Shown piece after piece: positions 6,796-63,768 of a stretch of 64,000 nucleotides of DNA. Within the stretch, counting starts at the first letter, position 1; each line of letters opens with the position of its first letter. The DNA lies in assembly GCA_038087875.1 (NCBI GenBank), contig JAXLNO010005102.1, positions 124,001 to 188,000 on the forward strand, in the 5' to 3' direction. Under the pieces are notes generated by a model that worked only from the letters and a program-made list of their open reading frames with translations, searched no databases and was not told the DNA's origin. The DNA comes from Malacoraja senta. Lineage: Eukaryota. The position numbers were made by a program, and so were the translations under genes.

Positions 6796-7497
6796 AGGGC
6801 CTGTCCCACTGACGCGACTTTACAGCGAGTGCCTTCGAACTTCAAGCTCGAGGGCACACGCCTGGAAAACCTCGAGCTGGATCGACCGTCAGCGATGAAA
6901 CCGCGAGATGGATCGACCGCACGCACGCACACATGAACACACACACTGCAACGGCGGGGGCCAGGGAAAGCGGGGGAGCGCTGTCTGAAACTCACACCCG
7001 CGATGAAGAAGAAGGTAAAAGACGGCTGCACAGTGTACAGTAAGTCCTTTAGAGAGTGCGGGGGGGGGGTGGGGGTGGAGAGAAGGGGAGAAAAGGAGTG
7101 GAGACATTTTTAAGACGCCAATAATGTTTAGTGGGCATTTAACCTACAGGTCGGTTTTCCTTGGTCCTGAAAACTCCAATGAGCTAATTAAAATGCCCGG
7201 TCAGCGAAGGAGATTGCCTACAGATGCCCTCGACTGCCTGTAACTACATAACGACCCACTCCACTGCACTAAGTTCAAAAGTACCATGCCGACCAAATTA
7301 TACTCGTAGAAAAGTTTTCAACATGCTGAAAAATTTTCCGCGACCTAGCTGAGGCAGGAACTTCCCTCGAGCATGAAGGAGAGTTCCAGAGACCTCATAG
7401 GACCTCCCAGGACCACGTGTCGACCATGCTGCGAGTTTGAGTCGAGGGCAAACTCTTCTAAACTCGCAGATTAGGTCACCACAGTGGGACAGCCCCT
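6796..7497. mobile_element. PIF/Harbinger-type MITE, copy 1
   Basis: TIRs AGGGCCTGTCCCACTG ... CAGTGGGACAGCCCCT followed by TTA. Interior highly similar to the host element at 39207-41427. Confidence 0.8.
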
Positions 7498-11390: not shown

Positions 11391-11990
11391 TTTCCCATAT
11401 TCAAATATTGATTCAGATTCAGATCAGTTCACTGTCATATACATCAGTGTGCAATGGCATTTCTTGTTCATGTAAAGCTCACACAGTAAACAGTATATGC
11501 ACAGTTATGACAAAACATTAACAACATTGGAGTGAGATTGTTTATAATTCTCAGATTCCAAGTGATAATTTTAACCAATAATCTCCCCATTAATAGCTCG
11601 ACAATCTATTCCTATTAACCCATTCATCTTGCTTTAATTGGAACAATCTTTAGTCATTTTTTGTCATGTCCACAATGCTAGAAACACTGTTTCAATTATC
11701 TCAAGACGGTGAAAATTAACCTTTTCCTGCAGTGCCTTTCTCTTCTAGATGTGATGGAATATGTTAACAGGGAGAAATGTATAATCTAGAAGCTAGCATA
11801 GCAGAACTGGCTTGACTAAAGGTAAAAAATAGTTATTCCAAACTGAAACTCTATTTGGACTATTATTGTTTCTCCATTGAGATAGAGGAACTGGACCTAG
11901 AAACCAGACATATAGTTTCAAAATGTGCAGATCACAGCGTTGATAGAGCTGAAAAGCAGAGGTGCTGCATAGAACTTGTACGAAATCTTA

Positions 11991-12762
11991 TGCCCCTGTC
12001 CCACTTAGGAAACCTAAACGGAAACCTCTGGTGACCTTGCGCCCCACCCAAGGTTTCTGTGAGCTTCCCGGAGGTTCCGGTCACTCTCCCTAATGGTCGA
12101 AAGTGGTTTCCGCGTAGTCGAGGCTTCTTCTATGTTCCTGCGATTATTTCAACAAAATCAAAACCGGCCTCGACTAAAAATAGGTTGCCATTTGGTCGTA
12201 GCCAGTGGAGTGGGGTTGCTATTTACTTACAGGCAGTCGAAGGCAATCTCCTTCACTGACCGGCCATTTTGATTGGCTCATTGGAGTTTTCAACAAAGAT
12301 CCTGTAGGATCTTTGGTTTTCAGGACCTAGAAGATCCGCTGGTAGGTAAAATGCCCGCTAACTTTATTAAACTTCTTAAAACTGTCTCCACTCCTTCTCC
12401 CCCCTTCTTCCCCCCCCCCCCCCTTCTCTCTCCCCTTCTCTCTCCCCTTCTCTATCCTTCTCTCCCCTTCTCTCTAAAGGACCTACCGTGCTCTGTGGCA
12501 GCCGTTTACCTTCCTCTTCATCACACAGACAGCGCTCCTCCGCTGTACGTGGCCCCCACCTTCGCGATGTGTTTGTGTGTGCATGGGTGTGTGCGGTCGG
12601 TAGCAAAGATCCTGTAGGATCTTTGGTCAGTAGATGCAGCTCACGCTTCGGTCGAGTCTTTCCAGGCGAGTGACCAAAACCTCTGGCGACTCATGGAAAC
12701 TTTGGGTGGGGCGCAAGGTCACCAGAGGTTTCCGTTCAGGTTTCCTAAGTGGGACACGGCCA
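11991..12762. mobile_element. PIF/Harbinger-type MITE with about 65-bp TIRs and TTA TSD
   Basis: TTA|TGCCCCTGTCCCACTTAGGAAACC ... GGTTTCCTAAGTGGGACACGGCCA|TTA. Interior related, in inverted orientation, to the MITEs at 6796 and 39207. Confidence 0.85.
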
Positions 12763-12944
12763 TTAGTTACAGCATACTTCAAATTATGTGAACATTCCAT
12801 GTCTTCATTTGTAACATTGATCAAGCCCTGGAAAAAAATACAAAGAGGATTTATTGGAATGAAACCAAAACTGCGAGATTATGCCTATCGGCAACTAATG
12901 AGGCGAGATCTTTTTCTCTCTAGGTAAGACTGATGGTTAACCAA

Positions 12945-14010
12945 TCAATCCCCGTCTACTGTTACTCTCCTCTGCCTAGCGGAGCTGGTCCTTACCCGTA
13001 ACAAATTTTCATTTGACTACTCCCATTTCCTCCAAATACAAGACGTTGCTATGGGTACGCTCATTGGGCCCTAGCTATGCCTGCCTCTTTGTAGGGTACG
13101 TCGAACAATCTTTGCTCGAGGCGTACCAGGGCCCTATCCCCAAACTCTACCTCCGCTACATCGATGATTGCATTGGTGCCACCTCCTGCACACACACACA
13201 CACAACTCACTGACTTCATCCTTTTCACCACTAACTTCCATCCGGCACTCAAATCCACCTGGACCACTTCCGACATTTCCCTACGATTTCCAGACCTCAC
13301 TATCTCCATCGCAGGTGATAGACTACTGACCGACATCCGCTATAAACCCACTGACTCCCATGGCTATCTGGACTACACTTCTTCCCACCCTGCTTCCTGT
13401 AAGGACTCCATCCCCTACTCCCAATTCCTCCGTCTATGCCGCATCTGCACCCAGGATGAGGTGTTCCACACCAGGGCATCGGAGATGTCCTCATTCTTCA
13501 GGGAACGGGGGTTCCCCTCTTCTATTATAGATGAGGCTCTCACCAGGATCTCTTCTATACCCTGTAACTCTGCTCTCACTTCCCATCCCCCCACTCGTAA
13601 CAAGGGCAGAGTCCCCCTTGTCCTCACCTTCCACCCTACCAGCCGTCACATACAACAAATAATCCTCCAACATTTTTGCCACCTCCAACGGGATCCCACC
13701 ACCGGCCACATCTTCCCATCTCCTCCCCTGTCTGCTTTCCGCAGAGACCGCTCCCTCCGTAACTCCCTGGTCAATTCGTCCCTTCCCACCCAAACCACCC
13801 CCTCTCCTGGCACTTTCCCTTGCAACCGCAGGAAATGCTACACTTGTCGCTTTACCTTCCCCCTTGACTCCATTCAAGGACCCAAGCAGTCTTTCCAGGT
13901 GAGGCAGAGGTTCACCTGCACATCCTCCAACCTCATCTATTGCATCTGCTGCTCTAGGTGTCAGCTGCTCTACATCGGTGAGACCAAGCGTAGGCTTGGC
14001 GATCGCTTGG
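12945..14010 (+). mobile_element. Penelope-like element fragment (RT C-terminal half and start of GIY-YIG endonuclease)
   Basis: AMG..GPSYACLF, LRYIDD, YKPTDSHGYL, SIPYSQFLRL, CNRRKCYTC and NLIYCI.C..C.LLYIGETKR motifs; frameshifted. Confidence 0.9.
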
Positions 14011-14129
14011 GCTTGGAAAAAAGAAATATTACTGTACCTAGGTACACGTGACAATAAAGTACATTAACTGAAATCAACAGTTTAAAGCCATGTGAATTAG
14101 TGTGCATAAGTTTCCAGTTAGAATTATAG

Positions 14130-38470: not shown

Positions 38471-39897
38471 GTACATCACTAACATTGTCCATGGAAAGAT
38501 TCAGCGAGGGATCAGTGGTAATTGTGTTTACTCAGTCGGTATTGCAATGGATAATAAGAGGTTGCCAACTCACCATAATGTTTTTAAAATTTGTAAGTTT
38601 CATAGGCAACCATGGAAAATCTTCACAGCTTCAATTTTTTTTATTGTTGAAGGTTGGCTTTGCTGACAAATTTTGAACTTGTATTAGTCAATAGCCTCAA
38701 GAATAGCAGATATTTTGGGGGAGGTAGCCTTACATGTACTGTCTCATGCCACTGTACATGTTTCAAAACGGTTTACAAGAGATATGGATGTTACGCAGGC
38801 AGATAGGAATAATTCAGATAGACAACTTGGTCAACATGGATGAGTTGGATGAGTTAGGCTGACTGGCCTGTTCCCATGCTTTATAAACCTATTACTGTGA
38901 CTCCATCCAGGATGCCCTCATTTAGCAAATGAAGGCATTATCAAACATGTAAGTTATCAACTTGTTACAAATTGCCTTTGGCACTTTAAGGCAAATGCAA
39001 GTGTCTTTCCCCTCTTATGGGATGAAAAGAGATGAACTGATTTATTTAATCTCAGTCCTGATTTTTATGTTCTTTCACGGCAAGTTGACTGGCATCCTTC
39101 TTAATAACAATTTAGTTCTGCGATTTTTATGAAACATCACCGCTGAGTATAATTAAGATTTGTTAGCCAATTTGCAATAAAAAATGTCATGACTCAGCAA
39201 AATTTAAGGGGCTGTCCCACTGCGGCGACCTAATCCGCGAGTTCAGAAGAGTGTCTTCGACCTTCTAGCTCGAGGGCACTCGCCTGGAAAACCTCGAGCT
39301 GGATCGACCGTCAGCGATGAAACCGCAAGCTGGATCGACTGAGCGCACACACACACAAACACATCGCAAAGGCAGGGGCCAGGGAAAGCGGGGGAGCGCT
39401 GTCTGAAATTCACACCCGCGATGAAGAGGAAGGTAAAAGGTGGCTGCACAGTGTACGGTAAGTCCTTTAGAGAGCACGGAGGAGAGGGGGGTGAGAAGGG
39501 GAGAGAAGGGGGGGGGGAGAGGATGGGGGGAGAGGAGAGGGGGGAGAGAGAAGTGGGGGAGAGAGAAGTGGGGGAGAGAGAGAAGGGGGGGAGAGATAAG
39601 GAGGGGGAGAGAAAGGGGGGGAGAGAAGGGGGGGAGATAGGCTGTGGGCCAAGCATCAAAAATGTGTCTAGAAATCCATTTCCGTGACCCACGTAACGGA
39701 ACTACATGAAATTTTCCACAGATTTAGATGAAATATAATTGAGAAGGAAGTCATAACTCACGGTGCCAAAAGTTGCACATTAATTAATTAAACTAATTAG
39801 AAAATGAGAACGGGAAAGTAAGCGCCATCTAGTGTTCAATGCCCATATTACACCATGGGGGGCCTATTTCCGTGTTGCAGTCCATTTAAACTATATA

Positions 39898-39898
<1 letters not shown>

Positions 39899-39931
<33 letters not shown>
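39899..39931. repeat. (TA)n microsatellite
   Basis: Direct observation. Confidence 0.95.
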
Positions 39932-39934
<3 letters not shown>

Positions 39935-40303
39935 CGTAAATATGACTGTAATCATATATAATTAAGTATAATTATATTATATAAAAATAATATAATGAAT
40001 ATAATTGTGAGTGTTTTTTGAATGAGACTGCTGCAGAGGTCCTGCTCCTGAACCAGCCTAATTAATGGGTGAGTGCAGTTCTTGTGGGTTCCTCCCTTTA
40101 CTGAACCCTACTGACTGCCAGTGTGCAGAGTGGGGGTCACGGCCATAGTGGGACTGGGGCAGTGCCAGGCTGGGTGACAGACCTGTAAGAGACCTGTCTT
40201 ATTTCTAATGTAAATGTCACATCCTGACCAAGAATCGAATGCTCTGATGTTTACTCGATGAGTATTCATTTTAAGCTACAATGAGCCTATATTTATGTTA
40301 GAT

Positions 40304-40337
40304 GGTCTGAAGAAGGGTTTCGGCCCGAAACGTTGCC
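40304..40337 (+). ncRNA. Minimal type-I hammerhead ribozyme-like motif at the head of a Penelope-derived mini-element (40303-40436)
   Basis: GGU CUGAAGA A GGGU-UUCG-GCCC GAAA CG UU GCC; 3-bp stem I GGU/GCC. Confidence 0.7.
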
Positions 40338-41539
40338 TATTTCCTTCGCTCCATAGATGCTGCTGCACCCGCTGAGTTTCTCCAGCATTTTTGTGTACCT
40401 TTGATTTTCCAGCATCTGCAGTTCCTTCTTTAACACGATTCACAAAGTTTGACTGGTTTCACGACTTGGCTGTCCTCTTTGTGTTGCAGCACCTCAGCAG
40501 CGACTTTGCTTTCAAGGCTTTGTTCTACCTATCCACTTAGCTGCACATTCTTCAGACTTCTTAATGCTTTTCTCACTAAATTCAATTACCCTGCTGCAAG
40601 TTTCCACGACATGTATTCCACAGAACAACAAAGAACCTTCATCGGAATCTCCAGTAAAACAGGCATCAGTAGAAGCACACTCAGCCATCATATGTGCTCC
40701 CTGCCTAGCTAGCCTTAAACAAAGCACGTGGTTGGCCAAGTGGCGTCCGACTCAATGTTAAACGTGCTTTGATTGGACTAAAAATACCCCAAACATTTCC
40801 GTTTTTTCTCTAATTTAATTTTTTAAATGTGCAAGTTTTGTTCTTGACAAGTTTCAGGGGTGACTTATATAATATTTTTACACAATATGTGAACATTTCA
40901 TGTAGTTCCGTGAGTTGGGTCACAAAACTGCACAAAAAAGCTCCTCAGCCCACAGCCTAAGAGAAGGGGGGGGGAGAGAAGGGGCGGGGGGGGGATAAAG
41001 GGTGGAGACACTTTAAAGAAGTCAGACAACGTTTAATAAAGTTTAGCGGGCATTTAACCGACCGGTAGGTATTCCTTGGTCCTGAAAACTCCAATGAGCC
41101 AATTAAAATGCCCGGTCAGCGAAGGAGATTGCCTACGGCTGCCCTCGACTGCCTATAACTACATAGTGACCCCACTGCACTGCACTACAAGTTCAAAAGA
41201 ACCATGCCGACCAATTTTATATTCGCGGAAAAATTTTCAACATGCTGAAAAATTTTCCGCGACCTAGCTGAGGCCGCGAGTATGCGGGAACTTCCCTCGA
41301 GCATGAAGGAGAGTTCCAGTGACCTCATAGAAACTCCTAGGACCACGTGTCAACCATGCTGCGAGTTTGAGTCGAGGGCAAACTCTTCTAAACTCACAGA
41401 TTAAGTTGCCGCAGTGGGACAGCCCCTTTACTGTCAAGAGATATAAACAAATTACAGTTATATTCTGTTCCACATACATCAGGTCTATTATGTACGCTAT
41501 CCTAGCAATGTTTTTGCACAGTTGAATGCTTTGATAATA

Positions 41540-53435: not shown

Positions 53436-54307
53436 CTTCAAAGGTCCAAAGGTTCTTTATTTGTCACATACACCTTTGGTGTAGTGAAATGCAGATTGCC
53501 ATTGCAGCACATAAAAAAGAATACAACAACAATAATAAAGAAATTTAAACATAAAAATATCCCCCCACAATGGTTCCCACTGTGAGGGAAGGCACAAAGT
53601 CCAGTTCCCATCCCCATGTCCACCCATAGTCGGGCCTATTGAGGCCTCCACAGTAGCTGCTATGGGGCCCGATGTTTCAGGCCCTTCTCGCCGGGTGATG
53701 GTGCTGCGGCGTCGGGAGAATCCTCTCAGCGGCTTGGGATGCCTGGAACGGCCACATCCTTACCGGAGACCGTGGCTTCCGAAGCCAACAAGCCGCGCTG
53801 GTCGGAGCTCCACCACTGGCGATCTCAGCGAGAGATCCCAGGCTCCACGATGTTTAAAGTCAGCACCGCTGCCCGCGGCTGGCCGCTCCACAGTCCCGCA
53901 GCTCCACGATGTTCCAATCGGCGGTCCCAGCATTCCTCAGGTTGCACTAGAGAACCTGAGTTCCAGCGCGGTGACCCTGGCAAGGCATCGCCCGCTCTGC
54001 GATAGCGCTCCAGCGCTGTGCCGCCGCCAAAGCCGAGGTTCTGGCCGGTCCCCTCAGGAAACGCCGCTCCAGGCCCCGATGGTAGGCCGCGAGGACGGGT
54101 CGAAGGTGCTGCTCGGTGAAAAGCTGGCTCTCCGACCAGGTAGGGACTAGGAAAAGCGGTTTCCACCTCCCCCCTCACCCCTCACCCCCCCATATAAAAA
54201 AGACTAAACCTCCAAAAACTAAACTCACTAAAAATAAAAAAAGAGGTGAAAAAATGGACAGTTGCAGGCTGGGCAGCCATACCCATATAGGATGGCGCCC
54301 ACCCCTT
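53436..54307 (-). mobile_element. GC-rich non-coding retroposon, copy C
   Basis: GGCGCC head, T- and G-tracts, hairpin gccttccctcacagtgg/ccattgtggggg, tail aataaagaacctttggacctttg. Confidence 0.68.
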
Positions 54308-55877
54308 TCAACGTTTCTAAGTATTTAATGCGCATTGATTTTGAATGCAACCACAAATTATTGTACATACTGCATGTGCTGAATGGAAACTAAATTATCA
54401 GGCAGCAACTGCACAATTCAAGATTCTAAAACACTTCTGAAATTGAATCTGCCATCTTATAAAAAACAATTTAAAAAGTGTGTAGACTGTACAGGACTGA
54501 TAAGAGTATCAGGATAGTTTAAAGTAGCACTAGGGTTGTAATTTTAATAGGAAGTTAATTATTCCCATCATGTATTTTTTAATAAATCTTGCTATTAAAT
54601 AATTAAAATTAAACGGAAGATATTGAAATTGTGAAATGAAGTTTAATCATGAAGTAAACTTTGGCATCTTTGAATGAGGAAGATTTCTTGTCTGTCAGAA
54701 CCTACTCAAGATAAAACTGGTGGTAAATTGTACAAATCTTCACAATTATGCCAGTCGCCTTATCTGTCACTGCAGTGACTCAAGTTCCAGAAACCTTAAT
54801 TGCATATCTGGAATCTAGTTGCAGTTGCAGGTTAATTTACTTAAACGCCTTCCATGAGATCTTGACTCACTTCACTGAATAATTGCGAAGCACACAAGGA
54901 TAGTTTATTAAACCATTTAAATGATTCAACAACAACAAAAAATTATCTCTGTGAAACAACTTGAAAACAAACTTTTAAAGTAACAAATAATCCATTAATC
55001 ATTCAAACTTTTGCAATTTGTTTTGCATTCTGAAAATATTCGTATGTTTAGAGTGCTATGTATCTATTGTTAAATACATAAGAACCATTTTTAAACTGAG
55101 GTATTATGTCATCTATAATTGATGCAATGGTTGTATGATTTAAAATGAACAGTTAAATGGTGGAAAAGTTGCTTTCACCTTTGTTCAATCCCTTGAAGTT
55201 ATTTACATCAGAATTTAACAGACAGAGTCCAAATTCACTTGTGGGTTTATTTTTGAGCAATATTTGAGGCAATTATCAACTAGAAATGACTAACTTCGCA
55301 CCTCAGCAAAAGTTGTTTCATATATTTTTTAATTCCCAACCACTCCTGTCAATGAATCAAAGGTGTTGATTCACTTTGGCATGTTTCCATGGTAGACACT
55401 CCTTTCAAGTGGGCTTTCTGAGAAGTGATCGTAAAACATTGAGTACTGCAGCCATAAAGGCCCAACTGAGATTCCACCTCAGCCTGATAGCTATGCTTGT
55501 GCAATGTCCAGTAAAGGTCAGGAATCTTTGCACAATATTCCCGTCCCCAGTTAAATCGAGGCTTAATTTCCGAACACCAATGGTAATATTCACATTGCTT
55601 TTTTTTCCAGCAGAAAAGCAAGCTCATTGCAATTTTTGATGTTTAATCCCAAATTAGTTGGAATGACAGGAATCTTTCTCATTGTTCTTTTCATTATTAG
55701 TCTGTACTTTATTCAAGTGCTGTAAAATTAGTTATGAATCTAATACCATTGTGATATTTGCAGAAAGCAAGTTAATATTGTATGCACATGCCAATATTTG
55801 TTTTATATATACATGATGATGAGGAAATTTGGGTTTAGTACAGCTGGATAGAATTTGACACTTAGCAATATTTTAAA

Positions 55878-57614
55878 CTAGACTAAGTGGGACCCGTTGG
55901 GTCCCATGTTCACACAGGAGGGCTGGCCCCCCAACGCAATATTCCACCTCTGCACCAATTCCAATATTGGCGGCCAGTGGGAGGGAGAGGGGGGGGCTTT
56001 CTGGAGCACTAGTATGGGTATTGTGGGCTGAAGGGTCTGGTTTCCAGGGCTAGTATGGACATTGTGGGACAAATGGACTCTTGGCGTGGCAGGTCAGTCA
56101 CTCAAGCCTGATGTGCTGGCAGCTCACTCATGGCTGGTGGGCTGGCAGTTGACTCACGGCTATTCCTTGAAATTCCATTTCAAGCAGGGTGCAAGGCCAC
56201 CAAATTCAAATGCAGTTTCCTACCACTTCAAGCAGGGTGCAAGGCCACCGAATTCAAGTGCAGTTTCCGACCACTTCAAGCAGGGTGCAAGGGCACCGAA
56301 TTCAAGTGCAGTTTCAAACCACTTCAAGCAGGGTGCAAGGCCAACGAATTCAAGTGTAGTTTCATACCACCTCAAGCAGGGTACAAGGCCACCAAATTCA
56401 AGTGCTGTTTCATACCACTTAAAGCAGGGTGCAAGGCCACCAAATTCAAGTGCAGTTTCATAACACTTCAAGCACGGTGCAATGCCACCAAATTCAAGTG
56501 CAGTTTCATACCACTTCAAGCAGGGTCCAAGTCCACCAAACTCAAGTGCAGTTTCATACCACTTCAAGCAGCGTGCAAGGCCACCAAAGTCAAGTGAAAT
56601 TCCCTATCACTTCAAGCAGGGTGTAAGGCCACCAAACCCAAGTGCAGTTTCATGCCACTTCAAGCAGGGTGCAAGGCCACCAAACTCAAGTGCAGTTTCA
56701 TGCCACTACAAGCAGAGTGCAAGGCCACCAAATTCAAGTGCAGTTTCATGCCACTTCAAGCAGGGTGCAAGGCCACCAAATCAAGTGATGTTTCATGCTA
56801 TTTCAAGCAGGGTGCAAGGCCACCAAATTCATGTGCAGTTTCATGCCACTTCAAGCAGGGTGCAAGGCCACCAAATTCAAGTGCAGTTTCATGCCACTTC
56901 TAGCAGGGTGCAAGGCCACCAAATCCAAGTGCAGTTTCATGCCACTTCAAGCAGGGTGCAAGGCCACCAAATGCTAGTGCTGTTTCATGCCATTTCAAGC
57001 AGGGTGCAAGGCCACCAAATTCAAGTGCAGTTTCATGCCACTTCAAGCACGGTGCAAGGCCACCAAATCCAAGTGCAGTTTCATGCCACTTCAAGCAGGG
57101 TGCAAGACCACCAAATGCTAGTGCTGTTTCATGCCATTTCAAGCAGGGTGCAAGGCCACCAAATTCAAGTGCAGTTTCATGCCACTTCTAGCAGGGTGCA
57201 AGGCCACCAAATCCAAGTGCAGTTTCATGCCACTTCAAGCAGGGTGCAAGGCCACCAAATGCTAGTGCTGTTTCATGCCATTTCAAGCAGGGTGCAAGGC
57301 CACCAAATTCAAGTGCAGTTTCATGCCACTTCAAGCACGGTGCAAGGCCACCAAATCCAAGTGCAGTTTCATGCCACTTCAAGCAGGGTGCAAGACCACC
57401 AAATGCTAGTGCTGTTTCATGCCATTTCAAGCAGGGTGCAAGGCCACCAAATTCAAGTGCAGTTTCATGCCACTTCAAGCAGGGTGCAAGGCCACCAAAT
57501 CAAGTGCAGTTTCATGCCATTTCACAAATCACAGCTGTAAATCGCAGCATTTTTTCTAAAATCAATATACAGAACAACAGGAAGTGGTCAAGATCAGACT
57601 TTTAGTAATATAGA
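55878..57614 (-). mobile_element. Non-autonomous Helitron (canonical ends) carrying a tandem array
   Basis: Minus strand A|TCTATATTACTAAAAG ... GGGACCC-AAC-GGGTCCC ACTTAGT CTAG|T: 5' TC, 3' hairpin plus CTAG, A|T target, no TSD. Confidence 0.9.
56175..57522. repeat. 48-bp tandem repeat, about 28 units
   Basis: Unit CACTTCAAGCAGGGTGCAAGGCCACCAAATTCAAGTGCAGTTTCATGC. Confidence 0.97.
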
Positions 57615-57927
57615 TGAGTGATGGCGTGACAATAGTGCTTTCTTTTTTTTTTGTTAATAATATTTTTATTAGAGGCAAGTACATATCATGTTGAAAACAT
57701 TTCATGTATTTCATTTCTACATTAGTAATATTATCAAACTTTATTCGTGTTGCCTCCAATAGTTTTTTTTTATATGGATAGAAAATAAGAAAATAGCAGA
57801 AAAAGGGAAAAGAAGAAAAAAAAAGGGGATAATAAAGAAGAATGGAATAACTTACTAAAAGTACATCATTGGAGATATATTCGTACATTTCAAAGTATAA
57901 CTTTTCATCTAATCCTTGGCTCGAGTT

Positions 57928-60900
57928 TTAGTCAGGTTCTCGTGTCGAACCAGTCTGGCCCTTCAAGTAGTCAATAAATGGAGACCATGTTCTGATAAAT
58001 AATTCTTGTTTGTCCATTAGGACAAGTCTAATTCTTTCCAAATGTAAGGTCTCCGACATTTCTATAATCCACATTTAAATTGTGGGGGTTATAGGACCTT
58101 TCCAAAATTTTAATATTAATTTTTTTCCAGTTATTATACTATAATCAATAAAGTTTCTTTGAGTTGTTGTAAATGTTTGATTTTGTTCTAATATTCCTAG
58201 TATTATTAATTTTGAATCAGGATCCAATTGAGTGTTGACAACTATAGATATTATTCTAAAAATGTCCGCCTAATTTTTTTTAATTTTTATACAATTCGCA
58301 AATGTATGAGTTAGGTTAGCATCTAAATGTTGACATTTATCACAAATAGAGGAGATGTGTGGGAAGATTCTATTCAGTTTTGTTTTAGAATAATGTAATC
58401 TATGTAGTACTTTGAATTGTATTAGAGTGTCTGGCATTTAATGAACATTGATGTATATGTTGTAAACTTTCTTCCCAAGTATCTTTCGTTATTGTTTGGT
58501 TTAGTTCCTTTTCCCATGTTTGCCTATATAAATCCGTCGATGGTATCTCACTATCTAATAAGGTGTTATATATATGAGATATTAATGTTTCTGTATTAGG
58601 ATGCTTATTCAAACAGTCATCAAGGATTTCTGGATCTCTAGTTCTAAAGTTTTGAGTATTTGCTTTAACATAATCTCTAAGTTGTAGATATCTGAAAAAA
58701 TCATTTAAGTGGAGTCCATAAGTCTGTTGTAGCTCCTGAAATGAAAGAAATGTGCCTTTCTTATAAAGTTGTCCCATCATTTTAATTCCATAATTTTTCC
58801 ATTGTATGAAACCTTTATCTAACCTAGAAGGTTTAAATAAAGGGTTATTCACAATGGGAAGAAAGAGTGATAAATTATCCAATTTTAAGGTCTTTTTTAA
58901 TTGTTTCCAAATTCGCATACCACTGTGTATTATAGAATTTTCCCTATAAATTTTTTTATTCAATTTCGAGGTAGCAAACAGTATCGAACCAATTTCAAAG
59001 GGTAAACAGTCTTCCTTTTCCATTTTTCACCAATCCAGTTGCTGATCTATTTCTTCCAACCAAACGTTCATATTTTTAATGTTAACTGCCCAAAAATAAA
59101 ACAAAGAATTTGGTAAAACTAAACCTCCATTTATTTTTGATTTGCACAGATGTTTTTTGCTTGTCCTATGATTCTTATAATCCCAGATAAAATCAGTGAT
59201 AATGGAATCCAACTTTTTGAAGACTTTTTTGGCAAATATATCGGAATTGTTTGAAAAAGGTATAATATTTGCGGTAAAAAAAATCATTTTTATGGCATTA
59301 ATTTTACCAACCATTGAAATAGGAAGTGTTTTCCAGTACTGAATATTCTTATGTAGTTTATTCAGTAGAGGGGGGAAATTTAATTTAAATAATGATGCAT
59401 ATGTCTTAGTGACATAAATTCCTAGATATTTACATTTTTCATTAACTATTTAAAACGGGAATTGTTGTAATATATGTGTATTATGTTCCGTTATTGGCAT
59501 AATTTCACTTTTATTCCAATTAATTCTGTATCCAGAGAGTAAACCAAATCGAGTTATTAAATTTAATAAATTTGGAATACTAATTTCTGGTTTTGTGATG
59601 TAAATTAATACATCATCTGCGTATAAAGAAATTTTATTCACTGTGTCTTTAGTATTATACCCGTATATTTCCGGGTGGGTCCTAACTCTTTCAGCAAGTG
59701 GCTCAATAGCAAGTGCAAATAATAACGGAGATAACGGGCATCCTTGTCTACAACCTCTAGATAAATTAAATTTAGATGATAACCTTTGATTTGTTAATAT
59801 TCTAGCTGTTGGGTTAGTATATAAAAGTTTTACCCATGTACAGAACTTCTCACCCAATTGCAATTTTTCCATCACCGAAGATAAATAGGGCCATTCAACC
59901 TGATCAAATGCTTTCTCAGCATCAAGTGAGATTATTGCTAGGTCTTCGTTAGTGATTCTCTTTGAATATATTATATTAAATAATCGTCTCAAATTATAAT
60001 ATGAATACCGTTTCTGGATAAAGCCTGTTTGGTCAGGGTGTATTAATTTATTCATCACTGTACTTAATCTGTGTGCTAGAATTTTATTAATATTTTCTGA
60101 TCTGTATTTAAAAGAGCAATTGCTCTGTATGATCCTGGATCTTCTGGATCCTTATCAGCCTTTGGTATAAGTGTTATTATAGATTTGTTTAAAGTTTCTG
60201 GCAATTTCTGTTGAATATAAGTATACTCATACAGTGTTTGTAAACGTGGGGAGACCAAATCGTAATTTTTTAAATAAAATTCAGAACCTAAACCATCTGG
60301 GCCTGCTGCTTTACCGTTTTTTAAAGATCTAATAGACTCTTCAATATCTTTTACCGTGACTTCAGCTTCTAGTAATTCTCTGTCTTTTGAGCCTAAACCT
60401 TTTAGATTGCATTTTTGTAAGAATTCTACTATTCCTTCCGGCTGTTCTATAGTTTTAGTTGAATAAAGATTTTGATAATATTGGAGAAATCTCTCATTTA
60501 TATCCTTGGGCAGTATTAATAATTCTCCCATATCTGATCTAATTTTGTGGATTGTTTTTTCCCCCTCCAGTTTTCGAAGCTGACGTGCAAAGAGTTTTTG
60601 TGGGTTGTCTCCGAATTCAAAATGTAATTGTTTAGTGTGTTGGTAGAGTTTTATTACTTGTTCTGAGTACATTTTATTTAATTTGTATTTCAATACAGCA
60701 ATTTTATTATGTTTTATCATAGAAGGCATAGCCGCTTTTCAATATCTAGTTGCTTTATTTCCCTTTCCAGTGTCCAAACGCTTTAAATGTTTCCCAAATA
60801 AGAGAAGCAGATGTTCCAGGGTTATCATTAGTCTAAAAAAATGTATGAATCTGTTTAGTAAGATATTCCTGACATGATCTTTCCTTTAAAATTTGGGGAT

Positions 60901-61678
60901 TAAGTCTCCAATATGTTTGTTTCTCGGCCATTCCATTTAATTTAATCATAAATGTTAAAGGTGCATGGTCTGAGATTATAATATTATGATATTTTGTATT
61001 GTAAGTAAATGGGATGAGCATAGAGTCTACTAAAAAATAGTCTATTCTTGAGTAGGTTTTATGTACCGGTGAATAAAATGAATATTCCCGTCCGGTTGGA
61101 TTTTCGATTCTCCAGACATCCTTAATATTAGTGGTATTAATAAATGAGTTTAGAAATTCACTTGATTGAGATTTTACTATTTAATGCCTTGATGATCTGT
61201 CTAAATAAGGGTCTAGTGTACAATTTAAATCTCCTCCAATTATTAATTTATATTGTGTGAATTCTGGGATTGTATTAAATGTTTTCTTAAAAAACATTGG
61301 ACTATCAAAATTAGGTCCATAAACATTAAGAAGAATCACTTTTTTTGCGTTTAACTCTCCAACTAATACAATATATCTACCGTCAATATCCGCTATAGTT
61401 GATGTATGTTTAAAAGGTATCCCTTTACGGATTAATATTGCAACTCCTCTGGATTTGTGTGAAAAAGAGGAATGATACGCTTCAGCAATCCATTTTGCTT
61501 TCAGTCTATGTTGTGATTCGTTTTTAAGGTGGGTTTCTTGAAGGAATATTATGTCTGTCTTAAGTGATTTTAAATGTGCTAAAACTTTACCTCTCTTAAT
61601 TGGTTCATTAATTCCCTTAACATTCCAACTACAAAAAGTTATTCCTTCACTCCCTATTGTCATATTACCGTCTTGCAT
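57928..61678 (-). pseudogene. L1 ORF2 (endonuclease-RT-Cys-rich), broken by several frameshifts
   Basis: SWNVKG/LQETH/GGDLN, YRAIALLN, LDAEKAFD, GCRQGCPLSP and LYADD motifs spread over several ORF fragments. Confidence 0.92.
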
Positions 61679-62697
61679 ATTATTTCTAGGGTGGTCTGTA
61701 GAAGAGCAGATGGTACAACACACAAAACCTGACCTTACACCCGAACATCAGATGGATGAATTTTAAATCTCGTACATCGCTCTTCCGAGTATATCTCCTT
61801 AAATTAAACTTATGATTCCATTCAAACTTAAAATTATAATAATATTTAAAATGAGAAAAGTAATATAGTAGATTAGTGAAGTGTGAAAGAAAGAAAACTA
61901 CATCTACAGTTAGTGTAGTTAGTGTTAGCCACACTAGCGTGGCTAGCATTCTAAAAACTTCCATAGCCTTTGTAAAAAAAAAATCCTAGCTCCGTGCTTT
62001 CCATTAAAAAAAAAACTTTTTAACAATAAGACAATTTCTTGGGGAGTAATTAAACATTTTTAAACCAAAGAATTTCATAATTCATTAATAAGAAACATTA
62101 TTATTCTCAAAATACCGTATTAATATTGTTTTTAAGTATATATTTTTAATCGAAAAATAAAGAGGAAAAACGCCAACCCTTATTAATAAATGGGCTCAAT
62201 TAAATCTTACTTATAATCATATAACATATAATCCTAAGGTCATATTTAAACTATTTCTACGTTAACCAAATAATGTTAGTTATTAATCGTTGTTGGTAGT
62301 CATTCGTAATAATGAATGTTTATAAATGGTATAAATGTTAATAATAATAGTGATATTTAGTAATTATTAGTAATTAACTATAATATTAGAATGTAAATGT
62401 AATAATTAGTAATAATAATTAGTAACAATTAACAATAACACTAGGGTATAATTGTTCTATATTAGTTTTACTAGAAAAAAAAAGAGAAAACATTTTTGCT
62501 CCACTGTCCTTATCTATTTTCAATAGTCCTTAATTATAACACTTTAAAGTTCTTTAAAGTTCCTTTTAGACCTCGACGAGGTCTCGCTGCTCGTTGACAC
62601 CTGGAGAGTGATGTACATTGTTCAGTCTCTGGTCACGTTCCCAATATTCTTGGCGAATTCAAGTGCTTTTTAATGGTCTGTGAAGAGTTGCTCCGTC

Positions 62698-63768
62698 TCA
62701 TTGTAGGTGACTTAGTGTTGCGGGATAAATCAAGCCATATCTCAAATCAGGTATGTTCCTCAGTATTCTTTTTGTCTCTGTAAACAGCGCTCTCTTCTTA
62801 AAGACCTCCGCTGGATAGTCTCGATAGATGCTGATCCTCTCTCCTTCAAAAGTGAGCTCTCTGTTACGGACAATTTTCTTCATCATATCATCCAATTCGT
62901 GATTGTCTTGTACCTTTATTATCAGTTGTCTTGGGTGAGCATCATCTCGTGGACAACGCCCCTGCGCTCTATGTGCTCGACCTAGTAAAGGCTTTTGATC
63001 CAACTTTAAGGCTTTTTGTAATAAGTCTGCCGCAAAATCCCGAGGGTCACGACCCTTCTCTCTTCCTTCTTTGACACCTACAATTCTTAAGTTCTGGCGT
63101 CTCTGACGCCCCTCCAAATCAGTACACTTTTCATTTAACTTACTCAGCATTTCTGAAAGGCGCTGATTCTCGATAAGGAGTCGTTTTGTAGTTTCCGCAC
63201 TTGTCGCAGCGCATTTCTCTAGCTCGGTTATTGCTGCATTTTGTTGATCCAATATCTGATTGATGGTGTCCGACTTATCATTAAGGCTCGTTTCCATCGA
63301 ATTGAGCTTAACGTTCACCTCTTCCATCTGATCATTGAGACTTTCTTCCATAGTCTGCTTCCAAGCATCCAGTATGTAATGAACAGTGTTAATCATTTCT
63401 TCTGTAAATTCTTCCTTAAAAGAGTTGAATTCCTCTTTAAAGTTCAATCTTTCATTGAAAGCCTTCAGCTGCTCTTGTAAATTTTTAATTTCTAGGGAGA
63501 GAAAACTTCGAAGTTCTTCCACTTCCGATTTTTTTTGCTTTGGCTTCTTCGATATGTCTTCCTGGGACATCGTTGTAACTGAGGCCGAAGCCTCAGTTGG
63601 GCCTACCTCTTCCGCCGGTTGCCTGGTCCTACCGGACCTTTTTGTCCTGGGGGGGGGTATGTTGCATCGACATACCGCTAAAGTCGCGCGCCTGATGACG
63701 TCACTCGCTCGTTGCAGGCAGCCGTTCAAGTCGCAATCGCCACAGGTAAGTCCCGATTTTTCTCCCAT
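62698..63768 (-). pseudogene. L1 ORF1 (coiled coil + RRM/CTD), frameshifted near the C-terminus
   Basis: DLEGRQRRQNLRIVGVKE, RAHR, IYRDY and GLIYPA motifs; the true start codon is uncertain. Confidence 0.88.

What the first reader, a model, noticed from the sequence alone, without database searches (positions are those of the whole stretch)
12286..12633. Two identical 22-bp hairpins, each with its own 8-bp duplication: candidate P-element-type excision footprints or minimal transposons
Seen: CAAAGATCCT-GT-AGGATCTTTG occurs at 12294-12315 and 12604-12625 inside one Harbinger MITE. Each copy is flanked by a different near-perfect 8-bp direct repeat (GTTTTCAA/GTTTTCAG and GTCGGTAG/GTCAGTAG). The related MITEs at 6796 and 39207 carry the empty site (for example ggagttttcaggacc on the opposite strand), so these are real insertions. 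Known: P-superfamily elements have CA-starting TIRs and 8-bp TSDs, and the Drosophila P transposase makes staggered cuts that leave terminal TIR nucleotides at the donor site, so repaired sites keep both TSDs plus TIR stubs. Inference: these are stereotyped scars of a once-active P-like (or hAT-like) element in a cartilaginous fish, or a 22-bp mobile unit near the minimum possible size. The identical junction in both copies suggests microhomology-guided repair.
Basis: partly seen in the sequence, partly recalled or inferred. Interest (0 to 1): 0.78.

Follow-up and report, generated by a model that had tools for sequence, protein, structure and literature searches.

The report
Twin transposon excision scars in skate
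Two identical 22-base palindromes, each between two copies of an 8-base target duplication, are most likely the scars left when one cut-and-paste jumping gene landed twice in the same small repeat of a skate genome and cut itself out again; the scar shape fits the fruit-fly P element's long staggered cut, but the parent element was not found.

Summary
CAAAGATCCT-GT-AGGATCTTTG occurs exactly twice in the window (12294-12315 and 12604-12625; 0 expected). Each copy is flanked by a 7/8 direct repeat of 8 bp. Both lie in one Harbinger-like MITE. Two sister MITE copies carry the clean empty site for insert 1. At site 2 they lack the 22-mer and hold one copy of the target, though the alignment there is less clean.

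Best reading: two excision scars of one unidentified cut-and-paste element with an 8-bp TSD. Intact TSDs with only TIR-tip sequence between them match a P-type long staggered cut followed by end joining. They do not match hAT scars, which derive from hairpins on the flanking DNA. The identity of the two scars needs no mobile 22-bp unit. Two identical TIR tails can pair only at a self-complementary motif, and CCTGTAGG gives exactly 22 bp.

An unrelated animal-like host in public metagenomes carries tiny inserts with the same 10-bp tips. Four of them have perfect 8-bp TSDs. Inserts of 22, 30 and 36 bp there match the lengths that model predicts.

The window holds no parent element and no P or hAT transposase, so P membership is unproven. 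Abortive gap repair of a hAT or other element, or in-situ collapse, remain open. This scan had already flagged similar P-type scars elsewhere in this genome. It is a new member of a known kind, of moderate interest.

The parts
11987..12766 (+). Host Harbinger-like MITE: 77-nt inverted arms, TTA on both flanks, and an internal CT-rich microsatellite
   Evidence: arms 11987-12063 / 12690-12766, 91% complementary; TTA flanks; related copies
12286..12293 (+). Left copy of target duplication 1 (GTTTTCAA). The last base differs from the empty-site sequence.
12294..12315 (+). Scar 1: the 22-bp near-palindrome CAAAGATCCT-GT-AGGATCTTTG
12316..12323 (+). Right copy of target duplication 1 (GTTTTCAG), identical to the empty site in the sister MITEs
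12596..12603 (+). Left copy of target duplication 2 (GTCGGTAG)
12604..12625 (+). Scar 2: the identical 22-bp near-palindrome in the same orientation
12626..12633 (+). Right copy of target duplication 2 (GTCAGTAG). It differs from the left copy by CG to CA.
7163..7177 (-). Empty site 1 (GGAGTTTTCAGGACC) in sister MITE copy A (6801-7492)
41078..41092 (-). Empty site 1 in sister MITE copy B (39212-41422)
6909..6918 (-). Stretch of copy A homologous to target 2: a single copy with no 22-mer. It is the first unit of a 31-bp tandem duplication.
39331..39340 (-). Stretch of copy B homologous to target 2: a single copy with no 22-mer

Best explanation
A cut-and-paste DNA transposon that makes 8-bp target duplications, with inverted-repeat tips starting CAAAGATCCT, inserted into this MITE at two points 310 bp apart. 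The second insertion was most likely a local re-insertion of the same element. It was then excised from both sites. The transposase cut one strand at the element boundary and the other strand well inside the inverted repeat, as the Drosophila P transposase does 17 nt inside its repeat. Each flank therefore kept its full 8-bp duplication plus a single-stranded tail of tip sequence. The two tails have the same sequence, so they can pair only where that sequence is self-complementary. CCTGTAGG (tip positions 8-15) pairs with itself as six Watson-Crick pairs and two central G.T pairs. Trimming and fill-in then give one fixed 22-bp product (15 + 15 - 8). This explains why the two independent scars are identical. 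Shown here: the two inserts, their duplications, and the empty sites. Inferred: excision, the long staggered cut, the pairing register, and local hopping.
For: There are two identical inserts with different 8-bp flanking repeats, and the sister MITEs carry the empty sites. The structure never arose in simulated sequence. Both duplications are complete and only palindromic, non-flank sequence lies between them. [quoted passage not shown] It requires an overhang of 10-15 nt, and only P elements are known to make one that long (17 nt; PMC7776569). The best self-dimer of the 15-nt inferred tail is the CCTGTAGG register, which gives 22 bp. In an animal-like host in public metagenomes, the TIR read from longer inserts is CAAAGATCCTATAGGCCGCG. 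Its self-complementary registers predict products of 22, 30 and 36 bp. L060 is the 22-bp product exactly. L032 and L080 are the 30- and 36-bp products with one substitution each. Four inserts of that family have perfect 8/8 duplications. Vertebrate P-like elements with 8-bp TSDs and CA tips exist and their transposase is active (zebrafish Pdre2, PMC10983969). Unchecked notes of this scan report THAP-bearing P-like elements and other such scars in this same genome.
Against: The window holds no longer element with these tips and no P-type (THAP / Tnp_P_element) ORF, so the superfamily is not shown. The tail sequence beyond position 10-12 is read from the product itself, so the pairing model is partly circular for the skate. 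In the metagenome family some stubs exceed 17 nt: the 36-bp product needs 20 nt or more, the 49-bp palindromes have 24-nt arms, and L006 and L087 carry about 33 nt from one end. A strict 17-nt stagger cannot explain those. CAAAG also fits the hAT tip motif, and the GT....A. target fits hAT as well as P (PMC2577343; PMC3878927).
Confidence: 0.55

Rival explanations
1. These are remnants of a hAT element, or of another family with 8-bp TSDs (Zisupton, Merlin, MULE), made by aborted gap repair. After excision, each broken end copied only 10-15 nt of the element from the sister chromatid. The two short new strands then annealed at the same self-complementary motif.
For: The tip CAAAG fits the hAT Y-A-R-N-G tip motif (own knowledge). 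The targets GTTTTCAG and GTCGGTAG fit NTNNNNAN (PMC3878927). hAT elements are abundant in this genome according to unchecked scan notes. Stubs longer than 17 nt in the metagenome look-alikes are easier to explain by synthesis of variable length than by a fixed stagger. The self-annealing register model works equally well for newly synthesised strands.
Against: hAT, MULE and Transib cut through hairpins on the flanking DNA. Their usual scars are altered duplications with no element sequence (PMC5499845, PMC3878927). Tol2 scars are precise or small indels and never kept both intact 8-bp copies (PMC3553969). Aborted repair leaving fewer than 20 nt at both ends is, to my knowledge, rare. Here it would have had to happen twice.
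Confidence: 0.2
2. This was in-situ collapse with no excision. Two copies of a short fold-back or long-TIR element inserted here and later lost their interiors by replication slippage between short direct repeats (for example CCT ... CCT). That left the same minimal palindrome at both sites.
For: Long palindromes are unstable (own knowledge). If the TIR reads CAAAGATCCTACAGG, a 3-bp direct repeat (CCT) brackets exactly the deleted interior. Fold-back repeats carrying this hairpin at their centre exist in the metagenome host.
Against: It needs the same 3-bp slippage twice. No intermediate-length copy exists in the window. Slippage would be expected to give heterogeneous end points.
Confidence: 0.1
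3. The 22-mer is itself a mobile unit, a minimal non-autonomous transposon moved in trans, and one copy hopped 310 bp.
For: Identical sequence with two different target duplications is the classic signature of transposition. In the metagenome host two 49-bp palindromes at unrelated loci are near-identical.
Against: P elements need internal THAP-binding sites beyond the 31-bp repeat (PMC7776569). hAT elements need subterminal repeats (own knowledge). A rigid 22-bp duplex cannot bring its two ends into one synaptic complex (inference). The identity of the two copies is explained without mobility. Apart from two contigs covering the same locus, no two of the metagenome inserts examined were identical; the two 49-mers are the closest pair.
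Confidence: 0.05
4. This is not a transposon trace: chance, an assembly or adapter artefact, or filler DNA captured at breaks.
For: Only two copies could be examined. The parent is unknown.
Against: None expected by chance. One flanking repeat has decayed by a CpG transition. Clean empty sites exist. The exact 22-mer is in none of the 138 fetched public loci. Bacterial genomes show only 8 chance-like hits to the tip pattern, none with a duplication.
Confidence: 0.03

Closest known systems
Drosophila P-element excision footprints (end joining of 17-nt 3' tails left by P transposase)
   Same: Both copies of an 8-bp target duplication are kept. Only inverted-repeat tip sequence lies between them. 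Each stub is no longer than 17 nt. The tip starts with CA. The pair is clustered, as expected from local hopping.
   Different: The host is a cartilaginous fish. The tip sequence is unrelated to Drosophila P or zebrafish Pdre2 (CATACCTGTCAAC). The parent element and its transposase are unknown. The two scars are identical, which I attribute to a self-complementary motif in the tip.
hAT excision footprints (Ac/Ds, hobo, Hermes, Tol2)
   Same: An 8-bp duplication, an NTNNNNAN-like target, and a tip that fits the hAT motif.
   Different: hAT scars come from hairpins on the flanking DNA. They show damaged duplications and flank-derived palindromic bases, not 10-15 nt of element tip between intact duplications.
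Internally deleted non-autonomous elements made by aborted gap repair (KP-type P elements, Ds from Ac)
   Same: Both ends and the duplications are retained and the interior is lost, with the junction at a microhomology.
   Different: Known examples are hundreds of bases long and still mobile. These are 22 bp and very probably immobile.
Tiny palindromic inserts with identical tips in an animal-like host of public metagenomes (samples Ga0209365, Ga0209452, Ga0056123)
   Same: The same 10-bp tips CAAAGATCCT. Perfect 8-bp duplications in L022, L032, L051 and L112. A 22-bp form (L060) that differs from the skate 22-mer at one central base.
   Different: A different organism, with no other similarity to the window. 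Lengths run from 22 to 49 bp. Some stubs are longer than 17 nt. Part of the set sits inside a ~300-bp repeat, so those copies are not independent insertions.

Membership tests
P-type excision footprint | Both copies of the 8-bp (7-8 bp) target duplication are retained at the scar | tested here: met
   GTTTTCAA/GTTTTCAG and GTCGGTAG/GTCAGTAG, 7/8 each
P-type excision footprint | Only terminal inverted-repeat nucleotides lie between the duplications, at most about 17 from each end | tested here: inconclusive
   The 22 bp can be read as 10+12, 11+11, or 15+15 overlapping by 8, all within 17 per side. The parent TIR is unknown, so identity with a real TIR could not be checked.
P superfamily element | A parent element with the same tips that encodes a THAP domain and a P-type transposase | not testable with these tools
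   No further tip match, TIR/TSD pair, or P/THAP Pfam hit among 20 long ORFs of the window. The rest of the genome was not searchable. Unchecked scan notes say that P-like elements exist in this genome.
P superfamily element | Tips starting with CA and a GT....AC-like palindromic target | tested here: met
   The tip is CAAAG. The targets are GTTTTCAG and GTCGGTAG, against P GTCCGGAC. This does not discriminate, because Hermes GTGNNCAC and hobo GTTTAAAC share the pattern (PMC2577343).
hAT excision footprint | A scar made from opened flank hairpins: altered duplications, flank-derived palindromic bases, and no element sequence | tested here: not met
   The insert is not the reverse complement of either flank, and the duplications are complete. 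Mechanism from PMC5499845, PMC3878927 and PMC3553969.
hAT superfamily element | 8-bp TSD, NTNNNNAN target, Y-A-R-N-G tip | tested here: met
   All three fit (PMC3878927 for the target; tip motif from own knowledge). They fit P as well.
MITE / mobile non-autonomous element | Several copies with different TSDs, plus TIRs and subterminal transposase-binding sequence | tested here: inconclusive
   Two copies with different TSDs. However, 22 bp leaves no room for the internal binding sites described for P (PMC7776569). The genome copy number could not be measured.
PIF/Harbinger MITE (the host element) | 3-bp TWA duplication and long TIRs | tested here: met
   TTA on both flanks and 77-nt arms. No transposase link was tested.

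The most novel reading that the evidence does not exclude
The 22-bp palindrome is a working mobile unit, by far the smallest known eukaryotic cut-and-paste element, moved in trans by a P-like or hAT-like transposase that needs only about 10 bp of tip. The near-identical tips in a skate and in an unrelated marine-animal-like host would then mark a horizontally spreading family.
Probability: 0.05. Interest if true: 0.85.

Novelty: new member of a known kind. Interest (0 to 1): 0.4.

Why it matters
If the P-type reading is right, these scars are fossil evidence that a transposase making long staggered cuts was active in the germ line of cartilaginous fishes. To my knowledge such cuts have been shown biochemically only for the Drosophila P element. 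The scars also preserve the product of the repair step. The self-annealing rule proposed here (identical TIR tails can join only at self-complementary motifs, so scar length is set by the tip sequence) gives a simple, testable way to predict scar sequences and to recognise them genome-wide. It could be used to date and map past P-like activity in vertebrates. On its own, however, this locus is a neutral trace inside a dead repeat with no sign of function, and this scan has already flagged similar scars elsewhere in the genome.

Tried and rejected
Parent element and transposase:
- I searched the window for a parent element using tip matches with up to 2 mismatches paired with 8-bp repeats, and a generic TIR/TSD scan. 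Nothing convincing turned up. One pair at 53439-58102 (tips CAAAGGTCC / GAAAGGTCC, repeat 7/8) has only a 9-nt inverted match and no transposase ORF, so I treat it as chance.
- A Pfam scan of 20 long ORFs in the window found only LINE reverse transcriptase/endonuclease and Tc1 fragments, with no P or hAT domains.
- Fetching more skate DNA through an exact-protein look-up of a Tc1 ORF returned nothing on record.
- I had no tool-provided P transposase sequence to seed a protein search, and I did not type one from memory.

Public collections:
- Prokaryotic genome contigs gave 0 hits for the metagenome-type TIR and 8 chance-like hits without duplications for the short pattern.
- Viral contigs gave 10 hits, none with a matching flanking duplication (at most 3 of 8).
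- A full-text search for the 10-mer found only unrelated papers.

Ideas dropped:
- My first idea, that the T2/A7 target pattern points to hAT, was dropped after PMC2577343 showed the same pattern for P.
- I considered reading the site-2 flanking repeats as the MITE family's own 31-bp tandem duplication. I rejected this because the focal copy holds a third copy of the unit start (CGGTCGAG, 12649-12656), and because both repeats share the derived GTAG that the sister copies lack.

Full report
**Observation**

The 22-mer CAAAGATCCT-GT-AGGATCTTTG is at 12294-12315 and 12604-12625. It occurs nowhere else in the window, and none was expected in 100 shuffles. The first copy lies between GTTTTCAA and GTTTTCAG. 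The second lies between GTCGGTAG and GTCAGTAG.

I ran a blind scan of the window for any insert of 12-70 bp with palindromic arms of 7 nt or more between 8-bp repeats with at most 1 mismatch. Outside a TA microsatellite and one AT-rich chance hit, it returned only these two. Twenty simulated windows gave 0.2 hits per window at arms of 7 or more, and none at arms of 10 or more.

Both copies sit in one MITE. It has 77-nt inverted arms at 11987-12063 / 12690-12766 and TTA on both flanks, which fits PIF/Harbinger.

**Are they insertions?**

The window holds two sister MITE copies on the minus strand, at 6801-7492 and 39212-41422. At site 1 both read GGAGTTTTCAGGACC without interruption (7163-7177 and 41078-41092). 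The focal copy therefore carries exactly the 22-mer plus a second copy of the 8-bp target. The left repeat differs from the empty-site sequence at the base touching the insert.

Site 2 is less clean. This part of the MITE family holds its own 31-bp tandem duplication (units starting GGTCGATCCA, at 6909-6918 / 6878-6887 and 39331-39340 / 39300-39309), and the target carries a 3-bp indel. Neither sister copy has the 22-mer. Removing the 22-mer and one repeat from the focal copy raises the alignment score (54 vs 48 against copy A, 61 vs 55 against copy B). The focal copy still has the second unit start downstream (CGGTCGAG, 12649-12656). Its two repeats also share a derived GTAG that the sisters lack, so they form a new duplication rather than the family's own.

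The two repeats at site 2 differ by CG to CA, a CpG decay. This speaks for age and against an artefact.

**What made them**

Two different 8-bp duplications around the same sequence mean a transposase-type staggered target cut. The window holds no longer element with these tips. Among 20 long ORFs there is no P or hAT transposase domain, only LINE reverse transcriptase/endonuclease and Tc1 fragments. The parent could therefore not be identified here.

The shape of the remnant is informative. Both duplications are complete, and between them lies only a short palindrome that is not the complement of either flank.
- hAT, MULE and Transib elements excise through hairpins on the flanking DNA (PMC5499845, PMC3878927). 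They leave damaged duplications. Tol2 scars were precise or small indels and never kept both 8-bp copies (PMC3553969).
- The only known transposase that leaves overhangs of 10 nt or more is the P transposase, which cuts 17 nt inside its 31-bp repeat (PMC7776569).
- P-like elements with 8-bp duplications, CA tips and an active transposase exist in a vertebrate (zebrafish Pdre2, PMC10983969).

This makes a P-type scar the best fit.

Two features I first took as pointing to hAT do not discriminate. The tip CAAAG starts with CA, as P tips do. The target pattern GT....A. is shared by P (GTCCGGAC), Hermes (GTGNNCAC) and hobo (GTTTAAAC) (PMC2577343).

**Why the two scars are identical**

After a P-type cut, the two flanks carry 3' tails of the same sequence, because the repeats are inverted. 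Two identical strands can pair only at a self-complementary motif.

If the tip reads CAAAGATCCTGTAGG, enumeration finds two such registers. GATC would give a 12-bp product. CCTGTAGG, with six Watson-Crick and two G.T pairs, gives 22 bp. The predicted best self-dimer is the second. The product is then fixed by the tip sequence, so independent excisions give the same scar and no mobile 22-bp unit is needed. For the skate this is partly circular, because positions 11-15 are read from the product itself.

**Independent support from another organism**

Nineteen loci come from samples Ga0209365, Ga0209452 and Ga0056123. Their contigs have about 40% G+C, few ORFs, and a LINE-type reverse transcriptase, so they are animal-like host DNA. 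They have no other similarity to the window.

Five of these inserts share the longer repeat CAAAGATCCTATAGGCCGCG. Four of the five have perfect 8/8 duplications (L032, L022, L112, L051).

That repeat has self-complementary registers CCTATAGG, GGCC and CGCG, which predict products of 22, 30 and 36 bp. L060 is the 22-bp product exactly. L032 and L080 are the 30- and 36-bp products with one substitution each.

Limits of this support:
- L060 has no clear duplication.
- A second group (L007, L074, L033, L104, and L004/L068) carries the hairpin inside a ~300-bp repeat, so those copies are not independent insertions.
- Some stubs exceed 17 nt: 24-nt arms in the 49-mers, and about 33 nt on one side in L006 and L087. 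In that family either the stagger is longer, or repair synthesis is involved.

**Controls**

The exact skate 22-mer is in none of the 138 fetched loci. Prokaryotic genomes gave 8 hits to the short pattern, none with a duplication, and no hit to the longer repeat. This argues against a synthetic adapter.

**Clustering**

Two scars 310 bp apart, with no others in 64 kb, suggest local re-insertion or a hotspot. Both P and hAT elements are known for local re-insertion (own knowledge). This step is inference.

**Rivals**

- Aborted gap repair of a hAT or other 8-bp-TSD element would give the same product through the same pairing rule. It explains long stubs better, but it would have to stop within 15 nt at both ends, twice.
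- In-situ collapse of a fold-back element by slippage between CCT repeats is possible, but it needs the same event twice.
- A mobile 22-bp unit is unlikely because it has no room for the internal binding sites P elements need (PMC7776569).
- Chance or artefact is excluded by the statistics, the empty sites and the CpG decay.

**Earlier notes of this scan**

These are unchecked. They report, on other DNA of this same skate genome:
- several palindromic inserts of 12-46 bp with 8-bp duplications, read as P-type scars with the parent not found (s1-187576, s1-177984, s1-140271, s1-200032);
- THAP-bearing P-like elements (s1-191409, s1-213394, s1-140616);
- many hAT elements.

They agree with my reading, but I could not test them.

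**Verdict**

This is a real feature and most likely a pair of transposon excision scars of P type. It is a new member of a known kind. Interest is moderate, because the parent family is still unknown and the locus shows no sign of function.

Noticed in passing
L032:791-820, L022:390-422, L112:171-219, L051:668-716, L080:1163-1198, L060:102-123: An animal-like host in metagenome samples Ga0209365, Ga0209452 and Ga0056123 carries tiny palindromic inserts (22-49 bp) with the same CAAAGATCCT tips. Four have perfect 8-bp duplications. The two 49-mers are each perfect palindromes yet differ from each other at a symmetric pair of positions.
   Followed up: partly
L007:1010-1256, L074:1251-1506, L033:1573-1795, L104:372-422: In the same host, a ~300-bp repeat family with inverted outer segments carries a 30-bp CAAAGATCCT...AGGATCTTTG hairpin at its centre. 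The apparent 7-bp duplications in this group may not be true target duplications.
   Followed up: partly
L049:1450-1499, L117:3957-3988, L106:1219-1256: Contigs from samples Ga0209781 and Ga0209364 show longer inverted arms (about 18 nt, including the same 10-mer) that enclose telomere-like CCCTAA/TTAGGG repeats.
   Followed up: no
window 6878-6918 and 39300-39340: The sister MITE copies carry a 31-bp tandem duplication (units starting GGTCGATCCA). It complicates the alignment at scar 2. The focal copy has a shortened version.
   Followed up: yes
window 12395-12470 and 39350-39640: A CT-rich microsatellite inside the MITE family, expanded to different lengths in different copies.
   Followed up: no
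window 13164-14051 (+): A 295-aa ORF with no Pfam hit. Its C-terminus looks like the GIY-YIG nuclease motif of Penelope-like elements (LLYIGETKRRL).
   Followed up: no
window 62698-63768 (-): A 356-aa ORF with a coiled-coil and a basic tail resembling LINE-1 ORF1, next to reverse transcriptase and endonuclease ORFs at 59450-61723. It has no Pfam hit.
   Followed up: no
window 53439-58102: A pair of tips CAAAGGTCC / GAAAGGTCC (one or two mismatches to the scar tip) with a 7/8 flanking 8-bp repeat. The inverted match is only 9 nt and there is no transposase ORF, so it is probably chance.
   Followed up: partly
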